This document shows, piece after piece, positions 352-51,304 of a DNA stretch of 64,000 bases. Made by a program: the position numbers and the translations under genes. Where the stretch lies: IMG/VR virus record IMGVR_UViG_3300032562_000004, positions 171,813 through 235,812 of that record. One strand, 5' to 3'. The notes under the pieces are model-generated. The model did not search any database, had not been told where the DNA came from, and worked only from the letters and a program-made list of their open reading frames with translations. Every line of letters starts with the position of its first letter. Positions within the stretch are counted from its first letter, which is position 1.

Positions 352-804
352 TTAGAACGAGTACTTAACACCTGCGGTTACGATGTTGCCATTGTAAGCC
401 TTAGTAATGTTATTACCTTTTTGGTAGGCATAATCAGCTACCAAATTTACATTCTTAACTACAGGATAGGCAATCCCTGCGCCAATAAATCCAGCACCAC
501 CATTACCTACGCCAGGTTTTTGTGTGTCAATAAATGCAGCTCCAGCACGAACATTAGTTTGTACGGGACCTAGTTTGATAACGTCATAACTCACAGATGC
601 TGTGTAACGATTAACATCAACAGCATTGGTAGTACTACGATCAAAAGTTCCTTGAACGCCAATTGCGCCAAATGATTGACCAACAGAAACGCCTGCGGTA
701 TCTTGTTTAGAGCCCATGTTGCGGCCACCAAAAACACCAACGTCAGTTGCGAAAGCAAAAGTAGTTGATGCTAATAATGCTACTGCTAAAATTACTTTTT
801 TCAT
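352..804 (-). CDS. Outer-membrane beta-barrel protein (Ail/Lom/OmpA-like)
   Basis: Signal peptide MKKVILAVALLASTTFAFA, alternating beta-strand pattern, C-terminal aromatic ...GVKYSF (BAM signal). Confidence 0.8.
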   Translation of the reverse strand: MKKVILAVALLASTTFAFATDVGVFGGRNMGSKQDTAGVSVGQSFGAIGVQGTFDRSTTNAVDVNRYTASVSYDVIKLGPVQTNVRAGAAFIDTQKPGVGNGGAGFIGAGIAYPVVKNVNLVADYAYQKGNNITKAYNGNIVTAGVKYSF

Positions 805-922
805 ACTAATAGTTCCTTTATGTTTATACTACTGAACAAATATTTATTGTTTTTTTGCGTTGGCCTGCAAAAATTGCTAGGTTTTGGCATATTTTTAAGT
901 TTAATATACGCATATAATGAAG

Positions 923-950
923 TCAAAAGAATAGGGGTCGAAGCCCCTAT
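923..950 (-). terminator. Rho-independent terminator ending the tmRNA transcript
   Basis: Minus strand ATAGGGG-CTTCGA-CCCCTAT-TCTTTT. Confidence 0.85.
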
Positions 951-1292
951 CTGTTATTTTCTGTTTCGACGGATAACTCCGCAAAGCAGTGATTAAACTG
1001 CTAATGTTTGGCGTTGTGCTGTACGAGCAGAGAAACGAATTCCCTTACCTGAAACAGTTACTTCGCCTTTAGATGCGTTTGCATTTAAGTTTTTCGCTTG
1101 ATTTACAGTCATCGCCTACTGTGTTGCCTCTTTCATTATCTCACCATGTCGAAACCTTGTCATCCCCACTGAAACATACTACAGCTTTTGGCCTCGCTAC
1201 CGATAACTCGGTTCGGTAATATGCTTCGGTGGAGATGCCGGGAATCGAACCCGGGTCCACAGCGCCTTCACTACGAAGGAATTACAACAATT
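951..1292 (-). ncRNA. ssrA: Circularly permuted (two-piece) tmRNA: acceptor piece ~1292..1228, intervening segment 1227..1168, coding piece 1167..~951
   Basis: T-arm plus 3' acceptor strand GGACCCGGGTTCGATTCCCGG-CATCTCC-ACC precedes the 5' strand GGGGATG-ACAAGGTTTCGAC. The 7-bp acceptor stem has G3.U70. A resume context AAACTTAAAT-GCA-AAC is followed by a tag ORF. Confidence 0.9.
993..1082 (-). other. tmRNA tag reading frame ANASKGEVTVSGKGIRFSARTAQRQTLAV*
   Basis: Resume codon GCA at 1082..1080, 29 sense codons, TAA at 995..993. Confidence 0.8.
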
Positions 1293-1294
1293 CT

Positions 1295-1498
1295 TTACAG
1301 CGGAAGAATATTTGATGCTTGCTTGCCTTTAGGGCCTGCCACTACATCGAATGTTACCGCTTGATTCTCTTTTAAACTCTTAAAACCATTTGTGCTAATT
1401 GCGGAAAAATGTGCAAACAATTCCTCACCACCAGCATCGGGGGTAATAAATCCAAACCCTTTTGCATCATTAAACCACTTTACTTTACCTGTTGCCAT
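1295..1498 (-). CDS. cspA: Cold-shock protein (CSD)
   Basis: [18 protein letters not shown] (RNP1) and LFAHFSAI (RNP2), 67 aa. Confidence 0.97.
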
Positions 1499-1525: not shown

Positions 1526-1555
1526 ATTATACTACTATTTTACCTATTTTGTCAA
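1526..1555 (-). promoter_or_regulatory. sigma70-type promoter for cspA/tmRNA
   Basis: TTGACA-N18-TATAAT upstream of the cspA SD. Confidence 0.75.
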
Positions 1556-1784: not shown

Positions 1785-1860
1785 TGGTGGTCCGGGTAGG
1801 ACTTGCACCCACACTCCCCGAATTATGAGTTCGACGCTTTACTTTTTAAGCTACCGGGCC
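1785..1860 (-). tRNA. tRNA with CAU anticodon, probably Ile2 (lysidine type) rather than Met
   Basis: GGCCCGG...TCGAA-CTCATAA-TTCGG...GTGGG-TGCAAGT-CCTAC-CCGGACC-A-CCA, 76 nt with encoded CCA. C4-G69/C5-G68 pairs favour Ile2. Confidence 0.88.
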
Positions 1861-2265: not shown

Positions 2266-2553
2266 TCAAGGATATACTTTTTCGCCTTGCTTGAGTAACA
2301 CTACGCTAAACTTATCAGTTTTGAATTGTGTGTTGAGTTTTTTGGCAAGATTGATTGCGTGACCTGGATTACTAAAACTTACTTTTTTATATTTAGGTCC
2401 AGGGTACTGAACTAATAAATTAGAAGTTTTAAGATTAACTGGTTTATTATCAAAGTAAACGGCCCATACTCCTTCCGAAGCAAGTACTTGCTCGGTTTTG
2501 TATGTTTGCTTGTTTGTAAGCTCAGCTAAAATGGTTGGCTTGGGGCGACTCAC
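2266..2553 (-). CDS. Hypothetical phage protein (MSRPKPT...)
   Basis: 95-aa ORF, GTG start overlapping the upstream stop (GTGA). Confidence 0.75.
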   Translation of the reverse strand: MSRPKPTILAELTNKQTYKTEQVLASEGVWAVYFDNKPVNLKTSNLLVQYPGPKYKKVSFSNPGHAINLAKKLNTQFKTDKFSVVLLKQGEKVYP

Positions 2554-3152
2554 TTAGAATTCCTTTTGAATAGTTCTTTTCGTGCTTCAGATATTTTTTT
2601 ACAAGTTTCTGGAGAACGCTTTTTACCTTTGTGGAGCAACGATATTTTTTGTTTGAATTCCTCACTTCGTGGAACCATTATTTGTTTAGCTCTAGCATCT
2701 TTTATTTTTTGTTTTGTTTCGTCACTATGCTTTTTTCCTAACATAGTAGGCGCTTGTTTTGCTCTAGCAGTTCGAATCTTTTCTTTACTAGACTCTGTAT
2801 GTCTATAGTTTTTACTATTTTCTCTAATTTTTTGTCTAGTGGACTCTTTTACAGTACCGTAACTACCTCCCATTAATCCATCTTCGGGTTTAATGTTAGC
2901 CCATTCTGCTGACTCGACAATTTTGTTTTCTGTAGAAAATTTTAAAGCGTATTCGACTAATGTTTCTTTATTATCGAATAGCTGACACCAAACGGTAGTA
3001 ACATCTAGACCGTGTTTATTAAGATGTGCCCGCCAGTGTACGCCAGATCCTAAATATTTGTTAGGATCCCGTATAGTTTTTCCAAAGTATTTTAGACCGG
3101 TAGTATTATGTTGCTTAATGTACAACCAGGTAGGTTTAAACGGTTTCGACAT
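2550..3152 (-). mobile_element. Free-standing GIY-YIG homing endonuclease with NUMOD3-type repeats
   Basis: WLYIKQHNTTGLKYFGKT...YLGSG..W N-terminus, ANIKPEDG, and repeats HTESSKEKIR / HSDETKQKIK / RSEEFKQKIS. Confidence 0.85.
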
Positions 3153-3403: not shown

Positions 3404-3774
3404 TGTTCTCTCTTTAAAAAGTTAGCTAGCTTAGGTGGTTCCCATCCCAATGGTTTAAGAATTTTACCATCTTCACGACGGCGTACTTTGCCCAGTTGAC
3501 GGTCAATTTTGGCAAAGTTAGTAGCCATTACCTCACGCCAAGCACCTTCACCATCTGCGCCCATCGAATTGATTGCTCCGATAGTAACGACAATAATATC
3601 GATTAAAGCATCAAGAGTTTCAACTTGATTTTTATTAGCAATAGCTACTTGTAGCTCGTCGTATTCTTCTGTAATCAATTTGGAGTAAAGTCTAAACTGA
3701 TCATCATTCATGCCTGAGATAGTCTGCTCGCAAGCTGTCATAAATTTTGCTGAATCCTTAAACGGGTTTGTCAT
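3400..3774 (-). CDS. MazG-like/all-alpha NTP pyrophosphohydrolase
   Basis: EEYDEL...ETLDALIDIIVV...SNFAK-like and GKILKP motifs. Start moved to ATG 3774 (MTNPFKD), which overlaps the upstream stop. Confidence 0.8.
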   Translation of the reverse strand: MTNPFKDSAKFMTACEQTISGMNDDQFRLYSKLITEEYDELQVAIANKNQVETLDALIDIIVVTIGAINSMGADGEGAWREVMATNFAKIDRQLGKVRRREDGKILKPLGWEPPKLANFLKREH

Positions 3775-4391
3775 ACTTTTTCCTTTTTCTTTAATTGTGC
3801 GTTGCGTCTTGCTTCGGACCAAGGCTTACCTTTATGCTGTGATCCATAAATCTTTTTTCTCTCTTCTTCTGTAAGAGAACTTCTATGTTGTAATGCCTTT
3901 TCTTGCATCACTACTTTTGTATCTTCTGAATGTTCTTTATCTCTAAACGGATTATTTTCCTTCATCCATTCTCTGTGTTTTTCTTTTCTTCTCTTTGCTT
4001 CTTCTTTATCCTGTTGTATCTCTTCGTAAGTCTTGCCTTTGTTTTTACCTGGCTTACCTCTGCTGGCATTGCCTATTTTAGTTTTTGCTTCTTCGGTATG
4101 ACTAAACGGACCACCATCGCCTGCTTCTGGTTTTAAGTTAGCCCACTCTGGACTATCTACTACCTGCCATAAGTCACTGTAGTACAGGCCCCAGGCTCTT
4201 ATTTCTTCATTATCTTTACACTCTTTTAATATTTCTGTATCAACATCATTGCCGTGTTTCTCGATATGAGCTGACCAACGCTTACCAGAACCTTTGTAAG
4301 TGTACGGATCTTGATTAGTCTTACCTAAATATTTTAATCCGGTTTTACGATGAGTTTTAATGTACAAGTAAATCATATTGTACTTAGTCAT
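3771..4391 (-). mobile_element. Free-standing GIY-YIG homing endonuclease
   Basis: YLYIKTHRKTGLKYLGKT..DPYTYKGSG, WANLKPEAGDGG, NUMOD3-like HTEEAKTKI / HSEDTK. Confidence 0.85.
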
Positions 4392-8372: not shown

Positions 8373-8734
8373 CTTACTTCACTCCTGCCATCGCCAACAT
8401 CGCGACTTTTAACTACTCGCGGCGACATTGCTTCGTATTGTTCTGCTGTTTCTAATACTACATTACGACATACTGCGGTAAACCAACGATCAATAATATC
8501 TGCGTCTGTATCTTTAGGATCCATCATATAGCCATGGCGAACCAAATCGGCAATCATTTTGTCATTCCAATCAAATTCAAATGCGCCTGAATTAATATCG
8601 TTAGGATCTATGTCCATACTTAATACTTCAAAGTATGCTTCGCCTTTTTCAGTAGCAACTTGTTTAGCTGACTTAGCTTGTTGTTGCGCTACAGCCGCAA
8701 TTGGCTTCTTTTTAAAAAAATCAAATATTCCCAT
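8369..8734 (-). CDS. Hypothetical phage protein
   Basis: 121-aa ORF. Confidence 0.7.
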   Translation of the reverse strand: MGIFDFFKKKPIAAVAQQQAKSAKQVATEKGEAYFEVLSMDIDPNDINSGAFEFDWNDKMIADLVRHGYMMDPKDTDADIIDRWFTAVCRNVVLETAEQYEAMSPRVVKSRDVGDGRSEVS

Positions 8735-9837
8735 TACTGATCCTTAAACAAATTTATTTCTTCCCATGGCAAATCTTTTTTGCCAAAGTGACCATAGTTA
8801 GTAGTCTTACTGTATATAGGTCTAAACAGCTTAAAGCGATTAATAATACCTAACGGAGTTAAATCTACATTATTATAAATCCACTCTGTTAACGCACGAC
8901 TATCACCGTCTGACTCTATATAAAAACTCATAGGTTGTGCTACCCCAATAGCATAACTAATTTGTACAGTAGCCCAGTTAGCACGACCAGCGGCAACAAT
9001 ATTCTTAGCCAAATAGCGAGCCATGTAAGCGGCGCTACGGTCTACCTTAGTAGGATCCTTGCCACTAAACGCACCACCGCCGTGTGGGCTATATCCACCG
9101 TATGTGTCTACAATAATCTTACGACCTGTTAATCCTGTGTCACCATCAGGACCACCTACTACAAAACGCCCTGTTGGGTTAATATAAAATTCTGTCTTTT
9201 CATCTACAAATTCTGTAGGTAATATATTACGAATAATATTGCCAACGTCTTTACGAACAGTTTCGATATCAACATCGGCATTATGTTGTGTAGAACAAAC
9301 TACTTTAGCAATACGAATAGGTTTGGCATCATCGCTGTATTCAAAAGTAACTTGACTCTTAGCATCTGGTCCAAGATAGTTAAGTACACCTTGTTTACGA
9401 ACTTGTGTTAACCCTTCTACAATTCTATGACTCCAGTAAATTGCCGAAGGCATAAAGTTTTCTGTTTCGTTACAAGCATATCCAAACATTAATCCTTGGT
9501 CGCCTGCGCCAAAGTTGTCTGTGCCTAACGCAATATCTGCGGACTGGCCATGTAGCAAGTTAATAATTTTAACAGTACGCCAATCAAATCCTGACTGCTC
9601 GTAACCAATATCTTTGATGACTCGACGAATAGCTGATTCTACTTCTTCTGAATGTAATACACCTTTATATTCTCCAGCAACAATTACTGTATCTGTAGTT
9701 ACCAATGTTTCACAAGCACAACGAAGACTAGTGTCTTCTTTACTCATTACTAAATCTAAAATAGCATCACTAATAGCATCTGCTACTTTGTCTGGATGTC
9801 CTTCTGATACTGATTCGCTTGTGAATAGATAGCTCAT
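8734..9837 (-). CDS. metK: S-adenosylmethionine synthetase
   Basis: FTSESVSEGHPDK, GAGDQG, GGGAFSGKDPTKVDRS signatures; start at MSYLFTSES (9837). Confidence 0.98.
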   Translation of the reverse strand: MSYLFTSESVSEGHPDKVADAISDAILDLVMSKEDTSLRCACETLVTTDTVIVAGEYKGVLHSEEVESAIRRVIKDIGYEQSGFDWRTVKIINLLHGQSADIALGTDNFGAGDQGLMFGYACNETENFMPSAIYWSHRIVEGLTQVRKQGVLNYLGPDAKSQVTFEYSDDAKPIRIAKVVCSTQHNADVDIETVRKDVGNIIRNILPTEFVDEKTEFYINPTGRFVVGGPDGDTGLTGRKIIVDTYGGYSPHGGGAFSGKDPTKVDRSAAYMARYLAKNIVAAGRANWATVQISYAIGVAQPMSFYIESDGDSRALTEWIYNNVDLTPLGIINRFKLFRPIYSKTTNYGHFGKKDLPWEEINLFKDQ

Positions 9838-10079
9838 TAATTTCCTTTTAATTTCCATATAAGATGTTCGGTACTGCTATGCCATTTGTATTGATACGCT
9901 GGTTCGCCTGGCCCGGACCATCCAGCTACGCCACGATAGGCATATTCTAGCCAGATTAACTTATTACTTAGCGCACATTTATGGGGTAGCCAAGAAAATT
10001 TGAGTTCCCAAAATGCCTTTCTATAAAAAGGATCGATTAAATCAGGTATAGGCATACCATGAAATCCTTGTGGATACAA
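9837..10079 (-). CDS. Hypothetical protein
   Basis: 80-aa ORF. Confidence 0.55.
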   Translation of the reverse strand: MYPQGFHGMPIPDLIDPFYRKAFWELKFSWLPHKCALSNKLIWLEYAYRGVAGWSGPGEPAYQYKWHSSTEHLIWKLKGN

Positions 10080-45954: not shown

Positions 45955-46683
45955 TTATGCTGGGATGATTTCCAGCGTTTTTCTAATTATACCAGGGGAT
46001 ATAAGCTCTAGCATAACTAGCCAGCCTTCCCCATCGTGATCTATAAAGAAATAATCTTGGGTCCGCAAATAAGGGGACTTTGATAGCCATTTAGCAAAAG
46101 CCGGAGCAACTCTTATAGTATCTTGTTGATTATTAAAAAAGTTAATTAAACTGTCTTTATTAGCTTGTGTTAGTTTTACGCTTTTAAAATAACTTCTGTG
46201 GGTAAACTTAGGAACTTTTAATTTAACAGTATTTTTAGGTCTCGATATTATAGCTTCTGTATATTCCTTATTGTCAAGGAAACTCATAGCATTAAGTCTT
46301 TTAAGTAAAGACATATTGTTACTGTATATCCAACCCAAGTTAACCGATGTAACTAATTTAAAATCAGCGGTTGTTGTAAGTAGTAACTCAGCTAATTCGT
46401 GAAGATCCTCAGAAGTTTTATCAGTAATATCTTTCCAACGCCTTGTTAATATAGTTTGAGCTAGTTGAGGTTGGCCGCCGGGACGAACTAAAGTCCAACG
46501 CTGTTGTGCGACTTCTCGCCACAACTTTCTACGATCAATAATAGCATCGATATAGTTGTGGTCGAGAGTCTTCATAGCACTTACTTCATCTAAAGCAAAT
46601 GCTACGCAGTATCGATATTTGTCGTAAAAGTATCTATCTTTATCGACAGGCTTAAACGTTAGGAGATTCGCCATCAAGAACAA
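45955..46683 (-). CDS. Hypothetical protein
   Basis: 242-aa ORF. Confidence 0.65.
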   Translation of the reverse strand: MFLMANLLTFKPVDKDRYFYDKYRYCVAFALDEVSAMKTLDHNYIDAIIDRRKLWREVAQQRWTLVRPGGQPQLAQTILTRRWKDITDKTSEDLHELAELLLTTTADFKLVTSVNLGWIYSNNMSLLKRLNAMSFLDNKEYTEAIISRPKNTVKLKVPKFTHRSYFKSVKLTQANKDSLINFFNNQQDTIRVAPAFAKWLSKSPYLRTQDYFFIDHDGEGWLVMLELISPGIIRKTLEIIPA

Positions 46684-48931
46684 TAATACCAGAATTGTCT
46701 ACAATCGCCAATGGAGCAGTTTGGATAATTGTAAAATCAATCTTATCATCGATTATGATAGCATTGACGGTGCAGTCAGATAAGCGTTCAAACAAAATCT
46801 TCTTAGACAAAGGTACACGAATCAATTCGTCAATCTTACGATTAAGTGGACGAGCACCCATCTTAGGATCATAACCTTTATCAGCTAGCATATCAATAAC
46901 TGCTTCGGATAAATTAAGTCTAATATTTTTATTGTTCAAACTAACTTGTAACTGTTCAACAAATTTAAGTACAACTTTCTTAATAGCAAGGGTATCAAGT
47001 TTCTTAAACTTACAAATTTGATCGATACGATTACGCAACTCAGGTTTGAAGAAGTCCTTCATTGCTTTATCTTCTGATCCTGTTTTTTGTAGTGCTTGAC
47101 CAAATCCAATGTTATTGTTTTCGTTATCGCGAGCACCTAAGTTACTTGTCATAATGATAATAGTATTCTTAAGGTTAACAGTTTTGCCGTTAGCACTAGT
47201 AATACGAGCTTCGTCTAACATCTGTAACATAATGTTAATAACATCAGGGTGAGCTTTTTCAATTTCATCAAACAGGATGATTGAATACGGATTCTTACTA
47301 ATATCACTGATTAACTTGCCGCCACCTACATTGCCATCTTCAAATCCTACATATCCTGGAGGCGCACCAATCAACGAACTTACAGTATGCTTTTCTTGAT
47401 ATTCTGACATATCATACTTTAATAATTGCATATCTAAGTTTGTAGCTAGTAACTTAGCAAGTTCTGTTTTACCAGTACCAGTTGGTCCTAAGAATAAGAA
47501 ACTAGCAATAGGACGATTGTCGTTGCCAATACCAGAAAAGTTAATATAAACTCGCTCAAGTACGCTGTCTACTGCTTCGTCCTGACCATATAATTTTTCT
47601 TTAATATTCGATTCAAGTTCTACAATATTAGCTGAACGCTCGTTTTGTAATCGATCCATAGGAACTTCAGTAACACGACTTAATTGTTCCATAATCATTT
47701 CTTTAGTAATAGTTACATTACCTTGATCCTTAACTCGTTCCTTAGCGCAAGCGCCGTCTAACAAGTCAATACTCTTATCTGGATTCTTACGGTCGTGTAT
47801 ATAACGACCTGATAAATCTACAGCGGCCGTGATAGCATCTGTATCAATTAATACATTGTGGAATGATTCTAAGCGTGGGCTAAGTCCAATAAGGATTTGT
47901 TCTGTAACTTCGTTAGTTGGTTCATCGATACTTACACGATGGAAACGACGCATTAACGCACGATCCTTTTCAAAGGACTCGTAGTATTCTTCCCATGTTG
48001 TACTTGCGATTACCTTAAGTTTACCTTTAGTAATAGCAGGTTTTAACATATTAGCAAAGTCAAGTGTAGATTGTGAGCTAGCGCCAGCACCTTTCATAGT
48101 GTGTGCTTCGTCTACAAACAAAATACAATTACCTTTAGTTTCTAATGCGCCAATAACTTGTTTGAACTTTTCTTCAAATTCGCCGCGATATTTAGAACCA
48201 GCTAACAATGATCCAATCTCTAATGCCCATACTTCATGAGCAATTAAGAACTTAGGAACACGATTATTAATAATCTCTTGAGCTAGGCCTTCTGCGATAG
48301 CAGTTTTACCTACCCCGGGATCTCCAACCATCAATACATTAGCTTTAAATTTACGAGCTAATACTGTAATCATTTCATCAAGTTCAGCACCGCGGCCAAT
48401 CATTGGCTCAAGGCGATCTTCTACCGCCATCTTAGTTAAGTTAACACAGTATTCAGTTAAAATTTCATCTGCTTGCGTAGTTGTAAGAACTACATCATCA
48501 TGTTTGTAGTGTGCTTGCCAGTATTCCATGAACTCTTGTTTCTTAACACCATACTTTAATAAAAAGTAATGTGCGTGTGAATTATTTTCAGCCATCATAG
48601 CAAGATACAAGTCGCCAGTATTCATTGAACGGCGCCCTGTGAACAATACTTGTGTCATTGCTCTGTTGAAGCAACGCTCGAGAGCATTTGTTTTCTTAGG
48701 CTGATTGTCTTTTTTAGTAGTAACCAAACTAGTTAAACTTTGTAAGTAAGCATCTAACTCCATATCTAATAAATCTACACTAGTCCCAAAAGATTCTAGT
48801 ACTTTATAAAATGGAGCATGGCGTATTAATACCAATAAGACGTGCTCAGTTAAAACATATTCGTGTTGACGCTCTTTAGCCAATTTAACAGCTTGGGCGA
48901 CGATTTGTTCGATTTCTTTATTGTTTTGCAT
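46652..48931 (-). CDS. clpA: ATP-dependent Clp protease ATP-binding subunit ClpA
   Basis: Clp N-domain, two AAA+ modules (GDPGVGKT, GPTGTGKT), DMSEY, LFDEIEKAHPD, MGARPL; no ClpB middle domain. Confidence 0.93.
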   Translation of the reverse strand: MQNNKEIEQIVAQAVKLAKERQHEYVLTEHVLLVLIRHAPFYKVLESFGTSVDLLDMELDAYLQSLTSLVTTKKDNQPKKTNALERCFNRAMTQVLFTGRRSMNTGDLYLAMMAENNSHAHYFLLKYGVKKQEFMEYWQAHYKHDDVVLTTTQADEILTEYCVNLTKMAVEDRLEPMIGRGAELDEMITVLARKFKANVLMVGDPGVGKTAIAEGLAQEIINNRVPKFLIAHEVWALEIGSLLAGSKYRGEFEEKFKQVIGALETKGNCILFVDEAHTMKGAGASSQSTLDFANMLKPAITKGKLKVIASTTWEEYYESFEKDRALMRRFHRVSIDEPTNEVTEQILIGLSPRLESFHNVLIDTDAITAAVDLSGRYIHDRKNPDKSIDLLDGACAKERVKDQGNVTITKEMIMEQLSRVTEVPMDRLQNERSANIVELESNIKEKLYGQDEAVDSVLERVYINFSGIGNDNRPIASFLFLGPTGTGKTELAKLLATNLDMQLLKYDMSEYQEKHTVSSLIGAPPGYVGFEDGNVGGGKLISDISKNPYSIILFDEIEKAHPDVINIMLQMLDEARITSANGKTVNLKNTIIIMTSNLGARDNENNNIGFGQALQKTGSEDKAMKDFFKPELRNRIDQICKFKKLDTLAIKKVVLKFVEQLQVSLNNKNIRLNLSEAVIDMLADKGYDPKMGARPLNRKIDELIRVPLSKKILFERLSDCTVNAIIIDDKIDFTIIQTAPLAIVDNSGIIVLDGESPNV

Positions 48932-48994: not shown

Positions 48995-49789
48995 TTACTT
49001 CTTTTGTGCTTCTTTGATAAGATTGGTTAGTTCGTCACTTAGGCTAGATGGCATTTTGGCATGAATTCTAACTAATAAATCGCCAACAGGTCCTTGGCGT
49101 GAAGCTAGTCCTCTACCTTTCAGACGCAATAGTCCGCCTGGCTGTGTTAACGGTGGAATGGTTAAAGTTAATTGGTTACCCAAAATATCTTTTACTTCTG
49201 TTTCTCCGCCAACTAAACAATCCCAAATAGATACTTGCTGGTCCATTGTTAAGTTTAATCCTTGGCGATGCCATTTTGGATGTTGATGTATTCTAAAATT
49301 AACAATTAAATCTGTGTTACCAGGACCTATGCCAGGATATTGAATATTATCGCCATCGTTAAGTCCCAATGGGATTTCTATTTCAATTGTCATTGAGCCT
49401 TGCTGTGTACCTACAGTAACAGGCCGCTTGCCGCCTTGTGCTACATCTTGTAATGTTACCCATAAGCTCATTCTGGTATGGGTTTGTCGTTGCTGTCCTG
49501 GATGTTGATGCCCTGGATGAAACTGTGCGCCAAACATACTAAAGATATTGTTAAAATCGAACCCGCCACCATTAAATTCAAAATGTATATTTTGATTAGG
49601 ATTATCGTATTGGGCTCGTTTACTAGGATCGCTTAATGTTTCATAAGCCGACTGAACCGATTGAAATTTAGCTTTATCGCCACCTTCGCGGTCTGGATGA
49701 TACTTTGCCGCCATACGGCGATATGCTTTTTTAATATCGTCAGCAGACGCATTACGGTCTACTCCTAAGGTTTGATAGTGATCTGTCAT
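48995..49789 (-). CDS. dnaJ: DnaJ/CbpA-type co-chaperone (J-domain + C-terminal domain, no zinc finger)
   Basis: [10 protein letters not shown]...YHPD..GD...AYETLSD; LRLKGRG..GDLLV. Confidence 0.92.
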
Positions 49790-50385
49790 ATTGTAATAAA
49801 TGTGCAATTTTTTCGTATTAGATAGGGAGATAAATTTGTAGCCGCCATTGCTTCTCTAATAGAAGCATATTCAATACCATTAAGTAATAACGGTTTTGAG
49901 GCGGCGTTCTCTTTACCTGTCCTGTTGCCTTTTTGTTTTTGACTGCTCTTACGTTTTCTATCATTGGAACAAGGTATTCCATATAATGGATGATTACTAC
50001 CTTTCATTCGTTCGCTTTGTGCTGGATTCTTCTTACCGCCCCAGACACTTAGCTCACCGACGTATACACCTTTTAATGCTTTACTTCGTTTGGCTCGAAC
50101 TTCTGGAGATATATTACTTCCGCCTTCGCCGCCATCTGTTTGATTTGCTAATATGCCAGTACCGATGTCTTTGCGCCCAAACTTTTTAATAAGTTTTTTT
50201 TCGAGGTCAAACGCTTCCTCCTCAAATAAAGATTTGGCAATTATTATAATTCGATTTTTATCTGATGGTGGTTTATAAGTGCGTTTTTTTGACCATGCTC
50301 GATCACCGGACCCCTTACCTATGTAGTAAGGGGATTGCCCGTCTTTACGAAGATAAGCATAAACATAGAATTTTGGGTCAGTCAT
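49786..50385 (-). mobile_element. Free-standing GIY-YIG homing endonuclease
   Basis: FYVYAYLR...PYYIGKG...E...N.TDGGEG; NUMOD3-like tail; own TTTACA-N17-TATAAT promoter. Confidence 0.88.
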
Positions 50386-50620: not shown

Positions 50621-51304
50621 TTATAGTGCTGGGAATGACTGTGTTGGGCCACTTGGCTTACCGCTAGCTGTTATTGGCGGTGTTGAATTAAAGGTTGGAG
50701 GAGTGGCTGTTGAGCCAAATCCGCCTGACGCAGGAGCGCCGAATCCGCCCGCTGTACTACCCCCGAAACCTCCTGCTGCCGGAGCGCCAAATGTTGAAGC
50801 CCCGCTTGATGATGAACCGAATCCGCCACTTTGTTGTCCTCCAAAACCGCCCCCTGCTGGAGCGCCAAAACCGCCACTTTGTTGACCACCAAAGCCTCCG
50901 CCCATTCCGGAGTTCATACCGTTATTCATACCGTTATTCATCATGCCAGGTTGCATACCTGGTGGAATATATGTGGTTCCAGCTCCAGGACCAAAGCCTT
51001 CGGCTAACCCGCCTTGCTCTGCGCCGGCCATCTTTTCTTTAGTGCGACCATAAGCGGCAATGCCTAATACCGCACCCATAGCAATATGAAATAGCCCAGC
51101 ACCTTGTAGTGTAAGTGGCTGCCATTGACTTAAAGGTCCAACTCTTTGCATAGTTTGAACCAACGCCCACAATACAGGAAATAACATAAAGTCACAACAA
51201 CATACAGCCATATACATCCAGCCCATCATTGGACGCCATTTGGCATTCATCCAATCTTCTTTTTTCTTCTCACTTGCGCTTAGTTGATTCTCGCAGTTAG
51301 ACAT
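50621..51304 (-). CDS. Holin-like membrane protein (3TM-holin type) with a Gly/Phe repeat tail
   Basis: WRPMMGWMY...PLTLQGAGLFHIAMGAVLGIAAYGRTKEK; located in the lysis cassette. Confidence 0.65.
   Translation of the reverse strand: MSNCENQLSASEKKKEDWMNAKWRPMMGWMYMAVCCCDFMLFPVLWALVQTMQRVGPLSQWQPLTLQGAGLFHIAMGAVLGIAAYGRTKEKMAGAEQGGLAEGFGPGAGTTYIPPGMQPGMMNNGMNNGMNSGMGGGFGGQQSGGFGAPAGGGFGGQQSGGFGSSSSGASTFGAPAAGGFGGSTAGGFGAPASGGFGSTATPPTFNSTPPITASGKPSGPTQSFPAL

What the first reader, a model, noticed from the sequence alone, without database searches (positions are those of the whole stretch)
951..1292. Phage-encoded circularly permuted (two-piece) tmRNA
Seen: on the minus strand the T-arm/3'-acceptor half (…CATCTCC-ACC, ends 1228) comes first. 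A 60-nt spacer follows, closed by a 12-bp stem (GAAGCATATTAC/GTAGTATGTTTC). Then comes the GGGGATG 5' half, a resume site, the tag ORF and a terminator. The acceptor stem has the G3.U70 alanine determinant, and the final A of CCA is not encoded. Known: this acceptor-first, coding-second order is the permuted tmRNA form described in alphaproteobacteria, some betaproteobacteria and marine cyanobacteria. Inference: the phage carries its own two-piece trans-translation RNA, transcribed with cspA. Standard one-piece models could miss it.
Basis: partly seen in the sequence, partly recalled or inferred. Interest (0 to 1): 0.85.

Follow-up and report, generated by a model that had tools for sequence, protein, structure and literature searches.

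The report
Jumbo-phage two-piece tmRNA, long tag
A large uncultured phage really does carry its own circularly permuted (two-piece) ribosome-rescue RNA; that kind of gene is already known in phages, and what stands out here is an unusually long, conserved 29-residue tag.

Summary
ARAGORN calls a permuted tmRNA, and two Rfam models pass their thresholds (tmRNA_permuted 118 bits against 47; beta_tmRNA 118 bits against 84). The acceptor piece (1289-1228, minus strand) comes first, then a 60-nt hairpin spacer, then the coding piece starting at G1 = 1167. G3.U70 is present, and the final A of CCA is not encoded. Comparison with 11 viral and 10 Rhodocyclaceae homologues recovers all helices, 13 of 37 pairs with compensatory changes. 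The window is a jumbo-type phage. A consensus promoter, cspA, the tmRNA and a terminator form one apparent transcription unit. No SmpB is in the window.

The kind is not new. Permuted tmRNAs are catalogued in many cultured phages, huge phages are reported to carry tmRNA and SmpB, and a cultured Pseudomonas phage (UF_RH6) carries an unannotated beta-type copy.

Distinctive points:
- The viral copies split from the sampled cellular genes with full support, and their core 24-mer is absent from 185,579 species genomes.
- The spacer is two to three times the cellular length.
- A 28-30-codon tag ending (L/F)AV occurs on over 70 viral contigs with very different tmRNA cores, and in no GenBank phage.
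- A ClpA homologue with a ClpP-docking loop is encoded by the same phage.

Verdict: new member of a known kind, moderate interest.

The parts
1526..1555 (-). Sigma-70-type promoter (TTGACA, 18 nt, TATAAT) that presumably drives the cspA-tmRNA transcript
   Evidence: 12 of 12 consensus matches. No other promoter-like site lies between it and the tmRNA, except a weak one inside the tmRNA itself.
1295..1498 (-). cspA/cspE-like cold-shock protein gene (67 aa), upstream cistron of the same unit
   Evidence: Pfam CSD at 2.1e-28. NCBIfam CspE/CspD/CspA families. The stop codon is 5 nt before the first tmRNA helix. The same linkage occurs in L028, L006 and L025.
1228..1289 (-). tmRNA acceptor piece. 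It holds the 5' strands of helix 2 (TGTTG at 1289-1285, CGCTGTG at 1264-1258), the T-arm (1254-1238), the acceptor 3' strand (1237-1231) and ACC (1230-1228).
   Evidence: Rfam alignments. RNAalifold and pair counts with covariation.
1168..1227 (-). Intervening sequence (60 nt) to be excised; a 12-bp closing stem with an inner hairpin
   Evidence: Fold z = -4.8. The closing stem is conserved, with compensatory changes, in viral and cellular homologues. Cellular IVS is 25-43 nt; viral IVS is 56-104 nt.
925..1167 (-). tmRNA coding piece. It holds the acceptor 5' strand GGGGATG (1167-1161), the 3' strands of helix 2, the PK1 region, the resume site, the tag ORF, the stop-codon hairpin, the 3' hairpin/pseudoknot region and the terminator.
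993..1082 (-). Tag reading frame: resume codon GCA (1082-1080), 29 codons (ANASKGEVTVSGKGIRFSARTAQRQTLAV), stop TAA (995-993)
   Evidence: ARAGORN. The same or a related tag is on 66 loci (65 IMG/VR stretches plus the window), giving 36 distinct peptides, all starting with Ala and ending (L/F)AV. A further seven contigs come from a scan anchored on the core instead of the tag, which reads a long tag at 16 of 21 loci.
925..951 (-). Intrinsic terminator (8-bp G+C-rich hairpin at 951-930, T-run to 925)
   Evidence: A homologous terminal hairpin is present in the cellular and viral homologues.
1785..1860 (-). Neighbouring tRNA-Met(CAT) with its own promoter-like site (1906-1878). It is part of the translation-gene neighbourhood, not of the tmRNA.
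   Evidence: The tRNA-Met is likewise upstream of the tmRNA in L002, L008, L013, L015, L023, L028 and L032.
46652..48931 (-). ClpA homologue (759 aa), a candidate downstream handler of tagged proteins. This link is inferred, not demonstrated.
   Evidence: TIGR02639 ClpA at 803 bits over its full length. 38% identity to E. coli ClpA. IGF at the position of the ClpP-docking IGL617. Two Walker A motifs. It occurs on the same contigs as long-tag tmRNAs in at least six cases.

Best explanation
This is a functional, phage-encoded, two-piece (circularly permuted) tmRNA of the betaproteobacterial structural type, carried by an uncultured jumbo-type phage.

Inferred mechanism:
1. A strong early-type promoter transcribes cspA and the tmRNA precursor as one RNA, ending at the hairpin terminator.
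2. Host tRNA-processing enzymes cut the precursor. RNase P cuts 5' of G1167. An endo- or exonuclease, followed by the CCA-adding enzyme, finishes the end at ACC1228. The 60-nt hairpin spacer is discarded.
3. The roughly 62-nt acceptor piece and the roughly 240-nt coding piece stay together through the 7-bp acceptor stem and helix 2.
4. Host AlaRS charges the complex through G3.U70.
5. The complex, with SmpB and EF-Tu from the host (or from a part of the phage genome outside the window), enters stalled ribosomes.
6. Translation resumes at GCA 1082 and adds a 30-residue tag (the charged Ala plus 29 encoded residues) ending in Leu-Ala-Val.
7. The ribosome is released, and the tagged chain is probably handed to a Clp-type protease. 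The phage's own ClpA homologue is a candidate unfoldase.

The likely benefit is to keep ribosome rescue running, on the phage's terms, during a long jumbo-phage infection. This would fit with the phage's tRNA set.

Shown here: the gene structure, its conservation and covariation, the phage context and the layout of the transcription unit. Inferred: processing, charging, the tagging activity and the fate of tagged proteins.
For: Detection: ARAGORN tmRNA* and two Rfam models above threshold.

Structure: RNAalifold on 12 viral and 10 cellular sequences recovers distal and proximal helix 2, the T-arm, the acceptor stem and the IVS stem. 13 of 37 pairs show compensatory changes. There are no broken pairs in the acceptor stem, T-arm or proximal helix 2. 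G3.U70 is present in 22 of 22. In more diverged viral copies the acceptor stem is fully re-paired (GGGCCAT/ATGGTCC) and still keeps G3.U70. These copies pass RF04321 at 56-93 bits.

Resume context: UAAAU-GCA-AAC matches the beta consensus.

Tag: the frame stays open and ends in a hydrophobic (L/F)AV in 36 distinct variants, and length differences are whole codons. The four tag expansions relative to the 10-codon form (+3, +14, +16 and +19 codons) are all in frame between homologous resume and stop anchors. The tag is more conserved (p-distance 0.15) than the 40 nt on either side (about 0.39) in sets not ascertained through the tag.

Expression: consensus promoter and terminator.

Phage context.

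Literature precedent for phage two-piece tmRNAs: PMC9004378 and PMC7162821.
Against: No SmpB is in the window or in any viral locus fetched. tblastn finds none, and a profile built from 36 SmpBs gives a best E of 1.2. Activity must therefore rely on the host's SmpB or on a gene elsewhere in the genome of at least 158 kb.

The tag is atypical (29 codons, ending LAV rather than LAA). Whole-tag dN/dS is only about 0.7, so a codon-level signature of peptide selection is weak.

The 5' end of the acceptor piece has no promoter of its own. It would need an extra cleavage, or it would stay attached to the cspA mRNA.

There are no expression or processing data, and the host is unknown.
Confidence: 0.88

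Rival explanations
1. The RNA does perform trans-translation, but its purpose is to re-route tagged proteins, not to provide generic rescue. Under this reading the conserved 28-30-residue tag is a phage-specific signal. It might be a degron read by the phage's own ClpA homologue, or a tag that escapes the host's SspB/ClpXP pathway. The phage would thereby control the fate of proteins from stalled ribosomes and compete with the host tmRNA.
For: The long tag is kept on very different tmRNA cores and is more conserved than its flanks. It lacks the canonical AANDxxY...LAA layout. The phage clade encodes a ClpA homologue that retains the ClpP-docking IGF loop. That homologue is on the same contigs as long-tag tmRNAs in at least six cases. 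Precedent for a phage tmRNA-like RNA interfering with the host system: phage DS6A, as described in PMC11915505.
Against: The ClpA homologue is a general feature of the clade (317 viral stretches). Its co-occurrence with long tags specifically, as opposed to short tags, could not be tested. Closely related cores also carry ordinary ANDExFALAA tags. A C-terminal Ala-Val may still be read by host ClpXP. No ClpP, ClpX or ClpS is in the window.
Confidence: 0.25
2. The element is a passenger: a host ssrA gene, or an attachment-site remnant, picked up by imprecise prophage excision, with no function for the phage.
For: tmRNA genes are common integration sites, and fragments of them do occur in prophages (discussed in PMC9004378).
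Against: The gene is complete, with both pieces, and has compensated substitutions. It is conserved on more than 70 viral contigs. It is separated from the sampled cellular copies with 100/100 support and is only 62-76% identical to them. Its core 24-mer is absent from 185,579 species genomes. It has phage-like base composition and sits in a phage operon with a consensus promoter.
Confidence: 0.02
3. The tRNA-like acceptor piece mainly serves cspA expression. Under this reading it is a structured 3' end that stabilises or processes the cspA mRNA, and the downstream coding piece is secondary.
For: cspA ends 5 nt before the acceptor piece and no promoter lies between them.
Against: Related tmRNAs occur without cspA upstream (L004, L011, L012, L029). 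One (L195) has a TATAAT-like -10 box directly upstream (my reading of the sequence, not a promoter scan). The coding piece, resume site and tag are conserved at least as well as the acceptor piece.
Confidence: 0.03

Closest known systems
Betaproteobacterial two-piece tmRNA (Rfam RF01850; Rhodocyclaceae such as Azonexus, Dechloromonas, Accumulibacter, Thauera, Azoarcus)
   Same: The permuted order is the same. The helix-2 5' strand (GTTGTAATTCC...AGGCG) is homologous. So are the T-arm, the acceptor stem with G3.U70, the hairpin IVS starting one base after ACC, the PK1 region, the resume context UAAAU/GCN-AAC, the stop-codon hairpin and the terminal hairpin.
   Different: The core is only 62-76% identical, and the viral copies split from the sampled cellular copies with 100/100 support. 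The IVS is 60 nt against 25-43 nt. The tag is 29 codons ending LAV against 10 codons ANDE(R/Q)FA(L/I/V)AA. There is no dedicated promoter; it is co-transcribed with cspA. The sequence is A+T-rich.
Phage-encoded two-piece tmRNAs already described: OM43 phage Melnitz and pelagimyophages (alpha-type, glutamine riboswitch), Caulobacter phiCbK-like phages, cyanophages (PMC9004378 and its Table S1)
   Same: A permuted ssrA is carried by large lytic phages alongside tRNA genes. No SmpB has been noted nearby. The proposed role is in maintaining or steering translation during infection.
   Different: The described cases are mostly alpha- or cyano-type and marine. This one is beta-type, has no riboswitch (none detected), is linked to cspA and has a much longer tag.
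Pseudomonas phage UF_RH6 (Samunavirus, OQ383211), an unannotated beta-type permuted tmRNA; its relative SM1 is listed as 'Permuted' in the Melnitz Table S1
   Same: RF01850 at 104 bits and RF04321 at 119 bits. Acceptor-first order. A long IVS of about 110 nt. Phage-borne.
   Different: It is a 95-kb phage of Pseudomonas. The tag is 12 codons, ANDTSFDVRLAA, with a canonical LAA end. The core sequence differs (GGGGCTG... 5' half).
tmRNA and SmpB genes of huge phages (Al-Shayeb et al. 2020, PMC7162821)
   Same: Very large phage genomes that encode translation-rescue components among many translation genes.
   Different: That survey reports presence only. It gives no account of gene form, tag or lineage. 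Here no SmpB was found in the 64 kb available.

Membership tests
Two-piece (circularly permuted) tmRNA | Gene order: the acceptor (3') piece lies upstream of the coding (5') piece, separated by an intervening sequence | tested here: met
   Acceptor piece 1289-1228, IVS 1227-1168, coding piece from 1167.
Two-piece (circularly permuted) tmRNA | tRNA-like domain formed in trans: 7-bp acceptor stem with G3.U70, T-arm, discriminator A and CC(A) | tested here: met
   GGGGATG/CATCTCC with G3.U70. T-arm of 5 bp with a TTCGATT loop. ACC at 1230-1228. G.U is invariant in 22 of 22 homologues, and positions 5:68 and the T-stem covary.
Two-piece (circularly permuted) tmRNA | Helix 2 pairing holds the two pieces together | tested here: met
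   Distal TGTTG/CAACA plus CC/GG. Proximal CGCTGTG/CATGGTG. Pairs 26:204 (GC/AU/GU) and 29:201 (GU/CG) covary, and none are broken. An alternative local hairpin CCTTC/GAAGG also covaries within the viral set.
Two-piece (circularly permuted) tmRNA | Score above the curated covariance-model thresholds | tested here: met
   RF04321 at 118.4 bits (threshold 47); RF01850 at 117.6 bits (threshold 84).
Two-piece (circularly permuted) tmRNA | Resume codon for Ala, followed by a short tag ORF ending in hydrophobic residues, with the stop codon in a hairpin loop | tested here: met
   GCA after UAAAU. The stop TAA lies in the GCAGT/ACTGC hairpin. The end is Leu-Ala-Val. The length (29 codons) and the Val end are atypical.
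Two-piece (circularly permuted) tmRNA | Pseudoknot PK1 between helix 2 and the resume codon | tested here: inconclusive
   The first stem (ACAGT...ACTGT) aligns to the Rfam model and is conserved. The second, pseudoknotted stem is not modelled by the tools and I did not establish it.
Two-piece (circularly permuted) tmRNA | Maturation into two stable RNAs (RNase P at G1, 3' trimming and CCA completion) and alanylation | not testable with these tools
   This needs RNA-level experiments. The sequence only shows that the final A of CCA is absent here but encoded in some relatives.
Two-piece (circularly permuted) tmRNA | Dedicated partner SmpB available | tested here: inconclusive
   None is in the window or in any viral locus. 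However, only 64 kb of a genome of at least 158 kb was available, and the host should supply SmpB.
Phage-encoded tmRNA (auxiliary translation gene of large phages) | Located in a bona fide phage genome, next to other phage translation genes | tested here: met
   PolB phrog_262 at 3e-192, with best relatives the jumbo phages Phosso and Atu_ph07. Identical contigs of up to 236 kb. A tRNA-Met lies next to the gene, and arrays of about 25 tRNAs lie within 4-10 kb in L013 and L023.
Phage-encoded tmRNA (auxiliary translation gene of large phages) | Not simply the host gene at an integration junction | tested here: met
   The core 24-mer has 0 hits in 185,579 species genomes. The viral and cellular copies are separated with 100/100 support. 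The gene is embedded in a phage operon.

The most novel reading that the evidence does not exclude
The 28-30-residue tag, A-x4-GEVTV(S/T)GK-x-(V/I)K-FSAR-x5/6-(L/F)AV, is a phage-specific signal. It has been kept, and apparently exchanged as a module, among very different two-piece tmRNA cores in a large clade of uncultured jumbo phages. It would work together with the clade's own ClpA homologue as a self-contained, phage-controlled tagging-and-unfolding circuit for products of stalled ribosomes. This would be distinct from generic rescue by the host SsrA/SspB/ClpXP pathway.
Probability: 0.2. Interest if true: 0.7.

Novelty: new member of a known kind. Interest (0 to 1): 0.42.

Why it matters
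What phage tmRNAs do is still an open question. Published proposals range from maintaining the hijacked translation machinery to selectively tagging host proteins for amino-acid recycling. This locus adds three things.

First, it provides a well-defined, structurally validated lineage of two-piece tmRNAs that appears to be confined to viruses. It is found on dozens of large phage contigs.

Second, it shows that the tag, not the tRNA-like core, is the part these phages hold on to or swap. That points to the fate of the tagged protein as the selected function.

Third, it offers a concrete candidate partner, a ClpA homologue with a ClpP-docking loop, that could be tested in vitro without culturing the phage.

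On the practical side, public gene calls annotate the tag region as a 39-aa hypothetical protein, and a cultured Pseudomonas phage has its tmRNA overlaid by hypothetical CDSs. Annotation pipelines for phages would therefore benefit from routine tmRNA_permuted scans.

Tried and rejected
1. Closest cellular relative. The exact 24-mer of the 5' half gave 0 hits in genome contigs. The cellular reference set is therefore a sample (Rhodocyclaceae only), and a closer unsampled cellular lineage cannot be fully excluded.

2. My first regular expressions for the 5' half and T-arm were too strict. They made 53 of 66 long-tag loci look as if they lacked a tmRNA. ARAGORN, nhmmer and Rfam then showed that these loci are diverged permuted tmRNAs. 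I considered and rejected the idea that the tag block also occurs at the end of ordinary protein genes, because the frame is open for only 11-36 codons upstream.

3. Codon-level test for peptide selection. The tag-pattern scan is biased by design. On unbiased sets, dN/dS is about 0.7 and variable sites show no clear third-position excess. This is inconclusive.

4. RNA structure as the reason for tag conservation. There is only a weak hairpin, almost no covariation, and z = -1.2. Not supported.

5. SmpB, ClpP, ClpX and ClpS in the window: none found.

6. The single-sequence MFE fold of the whole precursor mispairs helix 2. I relied on the comparative analysis instead.

7. The supplements of the 2025 tmRNA database paper that are held as text contain no phage entries or tag strings.

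8. Inferring the host from the tmRNA type was rejected. A beta-type tmRNA is carried by UF_RH6, a phage of Pseudomonas aeruginosa, a host genus that is not a betaproteobacterium and that, to my knowledge (not tested here), has a one-piece tmRNA.

9. I did not use the metagenome scan, structure prediction or the large protein searches. They would not have changed the verdict.

Full report

Yes. On the minus strand the order is as follows:
- helix-2 5' strands, from T1289;
- T-arm, 1254-1238;
- acceptor 3' strand CATCTCC, 1237-1231;
- ACC, ending at 1228;
- a 60-nt spacer, 1227-1168;
- GGGGATG, from 1167;
- resume codon GCA, 1082-1080;
- a 29-codon frame, with TAA at 995-993;
- a G+C-rich hairpin with a T-run, 951-925.

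The base after ACC is G, so the terminal A of CCA is not encoded. The spacer's 12-bp closing stem exists, with two G.U pairs, and folds far better than shuffles (z = -4.8, 0 of 200).

ARAGORN reports a permuted tmRNA (tmRNA*) with the tag ANASKGEVTVSGKGIRFSARTAQRQTLAV. Rfam's tmRNA_permuted (118.4 bits, threshold 47) and beta_tmRNA (117.6 bits, threshold 84, E 3.6e-35) both match over their full length. The only corrections are to boundaries. Rfam's 3' end (1024) is misplaced inside the tag, because the beta model's terminal hairpin is aligned there; my reading is that the expanded tag causes this.

**2. Context**

The window has 37% G+C, and nearly all ORFs are on the minus strand. It encodes:
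- a family-B DNA polymerase (phrog_262, 3e-192) whose best relatives are jumbo phages Phosso (50%), Atu_ph07 (47%) and the Rak2/GAP32 group (43%);
- NUMOD3 homing endonucleases, a 5'-3' exonuclease, MetK, a holin-like protein, a DnaJ/CbpA-like protein and a ClpA homologue.

Its ClpA homologue gene is 100% identical at the protein level to that of IMG/VR contig 3300031884_000939 (158.5 kb), which also carries the identical tmRNA (L002). The identical tmRNA is also on contigs of up to 236 kb, with about 25 tRNA genes a few kb away. No GenBank phage is close at the DNA level.

**3. Expression layout**

A perfect TTGACA-18-TATAAT lies at 1555-1526. cspA runs from 1498 to 1295 and stops 5 nt before the first tmRNA helix. 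No promoter-like site lies between them, and the only terminator follows the tmRNA.

In cellular beta-type genes, the Rfam model includes a dedicated promoter at this position. Here that segment aligns to the end of cspA without similarity. Co-transcription with cspA is therefore the simplest reading. The same linkage is seen in L028, L006 and L025 but not in all relatives.

One consequence is that the 5' end of the acceptor piece must be made by cleavage, or the piece stays attached to the cspA message. This is inference only.

**4. Structure and homology**

I aligned the tRNA-like domain and helix 2 of 12 viral and 10 Rhodocyclaceae genes. RNAalifold, with no prior structure, recovered distal and proximal helix 2, the T-arm, the acceptor stem and the IVS closing stem. 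13 of the 37 pairs show double (compensatory) changes. My own counts on the Rfam-defined helices show no broken pair in the acceptor stem, T-arm or proximal helix 2. They also show covariation at 5:68, at two T-stem pairs and at two helix-2 pairs, and G3.U70 in 22 of 22 sequences.

The coding pieces share the same series of elements from helix 2 to the terminal hairpin. The phage gene is therefore homologous to the cellular beta-type permuted gene. It is a capture of an already permuted gene (or shares its ancestor), not an independent permutation.

**5. How the phage copies differ**

*Lineage.* The 146-nt core is 62-76% identical between viral and cellular copies, against 76-99% within the viral set. 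The two groups separate with 100/100 support. The 24-mer at the 5' end of the coding piece is in every first-round viral copy and in none of 185,579 species genomes.

*Spacer.* The IVS is 56-104 nt in the viral copies against 25-43 nt in the cellular ones, with the same closing stem.

*Tag.* Cellular tags are the 10-residue ANDE(R/Q)FA(L/I/V)AA. Viral tags range from canonical 10-mers to 13, 24, 26 and 29 residues.

**6. The long tag**

A scan allowing any synonymous codon for GEVTVSGK-xxx-FSAR found 65 IMG/VR stretches, on contigs of up to 344 kb. With the window these make 66 loci, carrying 36 distinct peptides of 28-30 residues. All of them start with Ala at the homologous resume codon and end in (L/F)AV-stop.

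These loci have strikingly different cores:
- acceptor stems GGGGATG/CATCTCC, GGGCCAT/ATGGTCC and GGGGGTG/CACCTCC;
- canonical or UGCAAGU-type T-loops;
- IVS from 24 to about 100 nt;
- one copy with a TATAAT-like -10 box directly upstream, so possibly its own promoter.

All the examples tested pass RF04321 (56-93 bits).

That set was ascertained through the tag, so I repeated the search from a diverged core 20-mer. Of the 21 loci found, 16 have the long tag. These include the conservative variants GEVTVTGK and GEVTVSAK, and one locus cut off mid-tag. Two have ANASNDEVFALAA, and three have short ANDE-type tags. The window-type core likewise carries both long and short tags. Core and tag are thus mosaic.

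In the unbiased sets the tag is much better conserved (p-distance 0.15) than the 40 nt on either side (about 0.39). Whole-tag dN/dS is about 0.7, and the third-position excess is weak. A conserved RNA fold does not explain the conservation.

The four tag expansions are all in frame between homologous anchors. That, together with whole-codon indels and the invariant Ala-Val end, argues that the frame is translated. Peptide-level selection is likely for the central block and the C-terminus, but it is not proven.

No GenBank phage encodes this peptide.

**7. Partners**

No SmpB is encoded in the window or in any fetched viral locus. The same query and profile detect SmpB next to ssrA in 37 cellular loci from many phyla. 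ClpP, ClpX and ClpS are also absent from the window.

The 759-residue ClpA homologue is full length against TIGR02639 and 38% identical to E. coli ClpA. It keeps both Walker A motifs and has an IGF tripeptide at the position of the ClpP-docking IGL617, as do seven other viral homologues.

A relative of this ClpA homologue is encoded by 317 viral stretches, and it shares a contig with a long-tag tmRNA in at least six cases. This makes it a plausible handler of tagged proteins, but a specific link to the long tag could not be tested.

**8. What is already known**

Two-piece tmRNAs are established in Alphaproteobacteria, a betaproteobacterial lineage and cyanobacteria (PMC11915505).

Phage-borne copies are documented. 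Phage Melnitz and the pelagimyophages carry them, and a survey found 53 permuted tmRNA structures among the 133 unique tmRNA structures encoded by 402 of 18,146 phage genomes. These include phiCbK-like Caulobacter phages, cyanophages and phages of Sphingobium, Roseobacter, Bordetella, Pseudomonas, Citrobacter and Stenotrophomonas (PMC9004378). Huge phages are reported to encode tmRNAs and SmpB (PMC7162821).

I verified that the cultured Pseudomonas phage UF_RH6 carries an unannotated beta-type permuted tmRNA: RF01850 at 104 bits, tag ANDTSFDVRLAA, IVS about 110 nt. The kind, and even the subtype, is therefore already present in public phage genomes.

**9. Verdict**

The element is a new member of a known kind. 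Its distinctive traits are:
- membership of an apparently virus-only lineage;
- an expanded spacer;
- co-transcription with cspA;
- above all, a long, conserved, (L/F)AV-terminated tag that is shared across heterogeneous cores in a large clade of uncultured jumbo phages.

Those traits give it moderate interest and a testable hypothesis about what phage tmRNAs are for. They do not make it a new category.

Noticed in passing
window 46652-48931 (-) and 48995-49807 (-): A full-length ClpA homologue lies next to a DnaJ/CbpA-like co-chaperone (J domain plus DnaJ_C, no zinc finger). The ClpA homologue has the Clp_N, AAA, AAA_2 and D2-small domains and an IGF ClpP-docking loop. A relative of it is encoded by 317 IMG/VR stretches, so this jumbo-phage clade carries its own proteostasis genes.
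   Followed up: partly
L004:3541-3753 (-), L036:7990-8202 (-), L025:2749-2970 (+), inside the tmRNA intervening sequence: In some relatives the IVS holds a small ORF preceded by an AAGGA Shine-Dalgarno-like motif. The ORF encodes a conserved hydrophobic peptide, MF(E/D)NW(H/Q)W.Y(L/M)WGIA..NY.., and the differences are mostly conservative or at third positions. A protein gene nested in the excised spacer of a permuted tmRNA would be unusual. The window's IVS has no such ORF.
   Followed up: partly
window 1785-1860 (-); L161, L164, L184, L189 tmRNA T-arms: The phage tRNA-Met has the T-loop GGGUGCAAGUCC instead of the usual GGUUCGAAUCC type. The same unusual T-loop appears in the diverged (type 2/3) tmRNA cores of related phages.
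   Followed up: no
L159:1170-1605 (Pseudomonas phage UF_RH6, OQ383211.1, about 52.9-53.4 kb): A cultured Samunavirus carries a beta-type permuted tmRNA (tag ANDTSFDVRLAA). It is not annotated in the record, and the 3' end of one 'hypothetical protein' CDS (orf85) and an opposite-strand CDS (orf84) overlap it. Its host, Pseudomonas, is not a betaproteobacterium and, to my knowledge (not tested here), has a one-piece tmRNA.
   Followed up: partly
L310:1193-1312 (JGI 3300032677 contig, same locus as window about 990-1110): Public gene calling places a 39-aa CDS over the tmRNA tag region. In metagenome annotations this tmRNA is hidden as a hypothetical small protein.
   Followed up: no
window 352-804 (-); L029, L004, L028 downstream of their tmRNAs: The tmRNA is followed by a gene for a 150-aa protein with a signal peptide and a weak outer-membrane beta-barrel match; this is conserved in L029. 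Other relatives have a roughly 250-aa signal-peptide protein instead. Outer-membrane-type proteins are thus encoded next to the translation genes.
   Followed up: no
L001, L003, L009, L010, L014, L017, L019, L030: A separate group of viral contigs carries short permuted tmRNAs (tags G(A/E)QVE(M/Y)AMAA; RF04321 at 68-71 bits for the two scanned, L001 and L003). They share the exact 25-nt T-arm/acceptor string with the window although the rest of the gene is unrelated in sequence.
   Followed up: no
L006:6576-7146 versus window 902-1319: L006 has the same tmRNA as the window, differing by one base in the terminal hairpin. Its sequence diverges completely right after the terminator, which indicates a recombination junction there. 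ARAGORN mis-assigns its tag (GTHQFLAKYIQTALA) because of this.
   Followed up: no
window 8734-9858 (-), 2550-3152 (-), 3771-4391 (-), 50621-51304 (-): Other cargo: a MetK S-adenosylmethionine synthetase (TIGR01034 at 477 bits, above its cutoff), two NUMOD3 homing-endonuclease-like genes close to the tRNA/tmRNA region, and a protein matching the GTA_holin_3TM family.
   Followed up: no
window 1264-1280 (-) within the acceptor piece: The segment CCTTC-GTAGT-GAAGG can form a local 5-bp hairpin. This hairpin covaries within the viral set (C-G, T-A, T.G at the closing position). It competes with the inter-piece CC/GG pairing of the Rfam model, so it may be an alternative conformer of the precursor or of the free acceptor piece.
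   Followed up: partly
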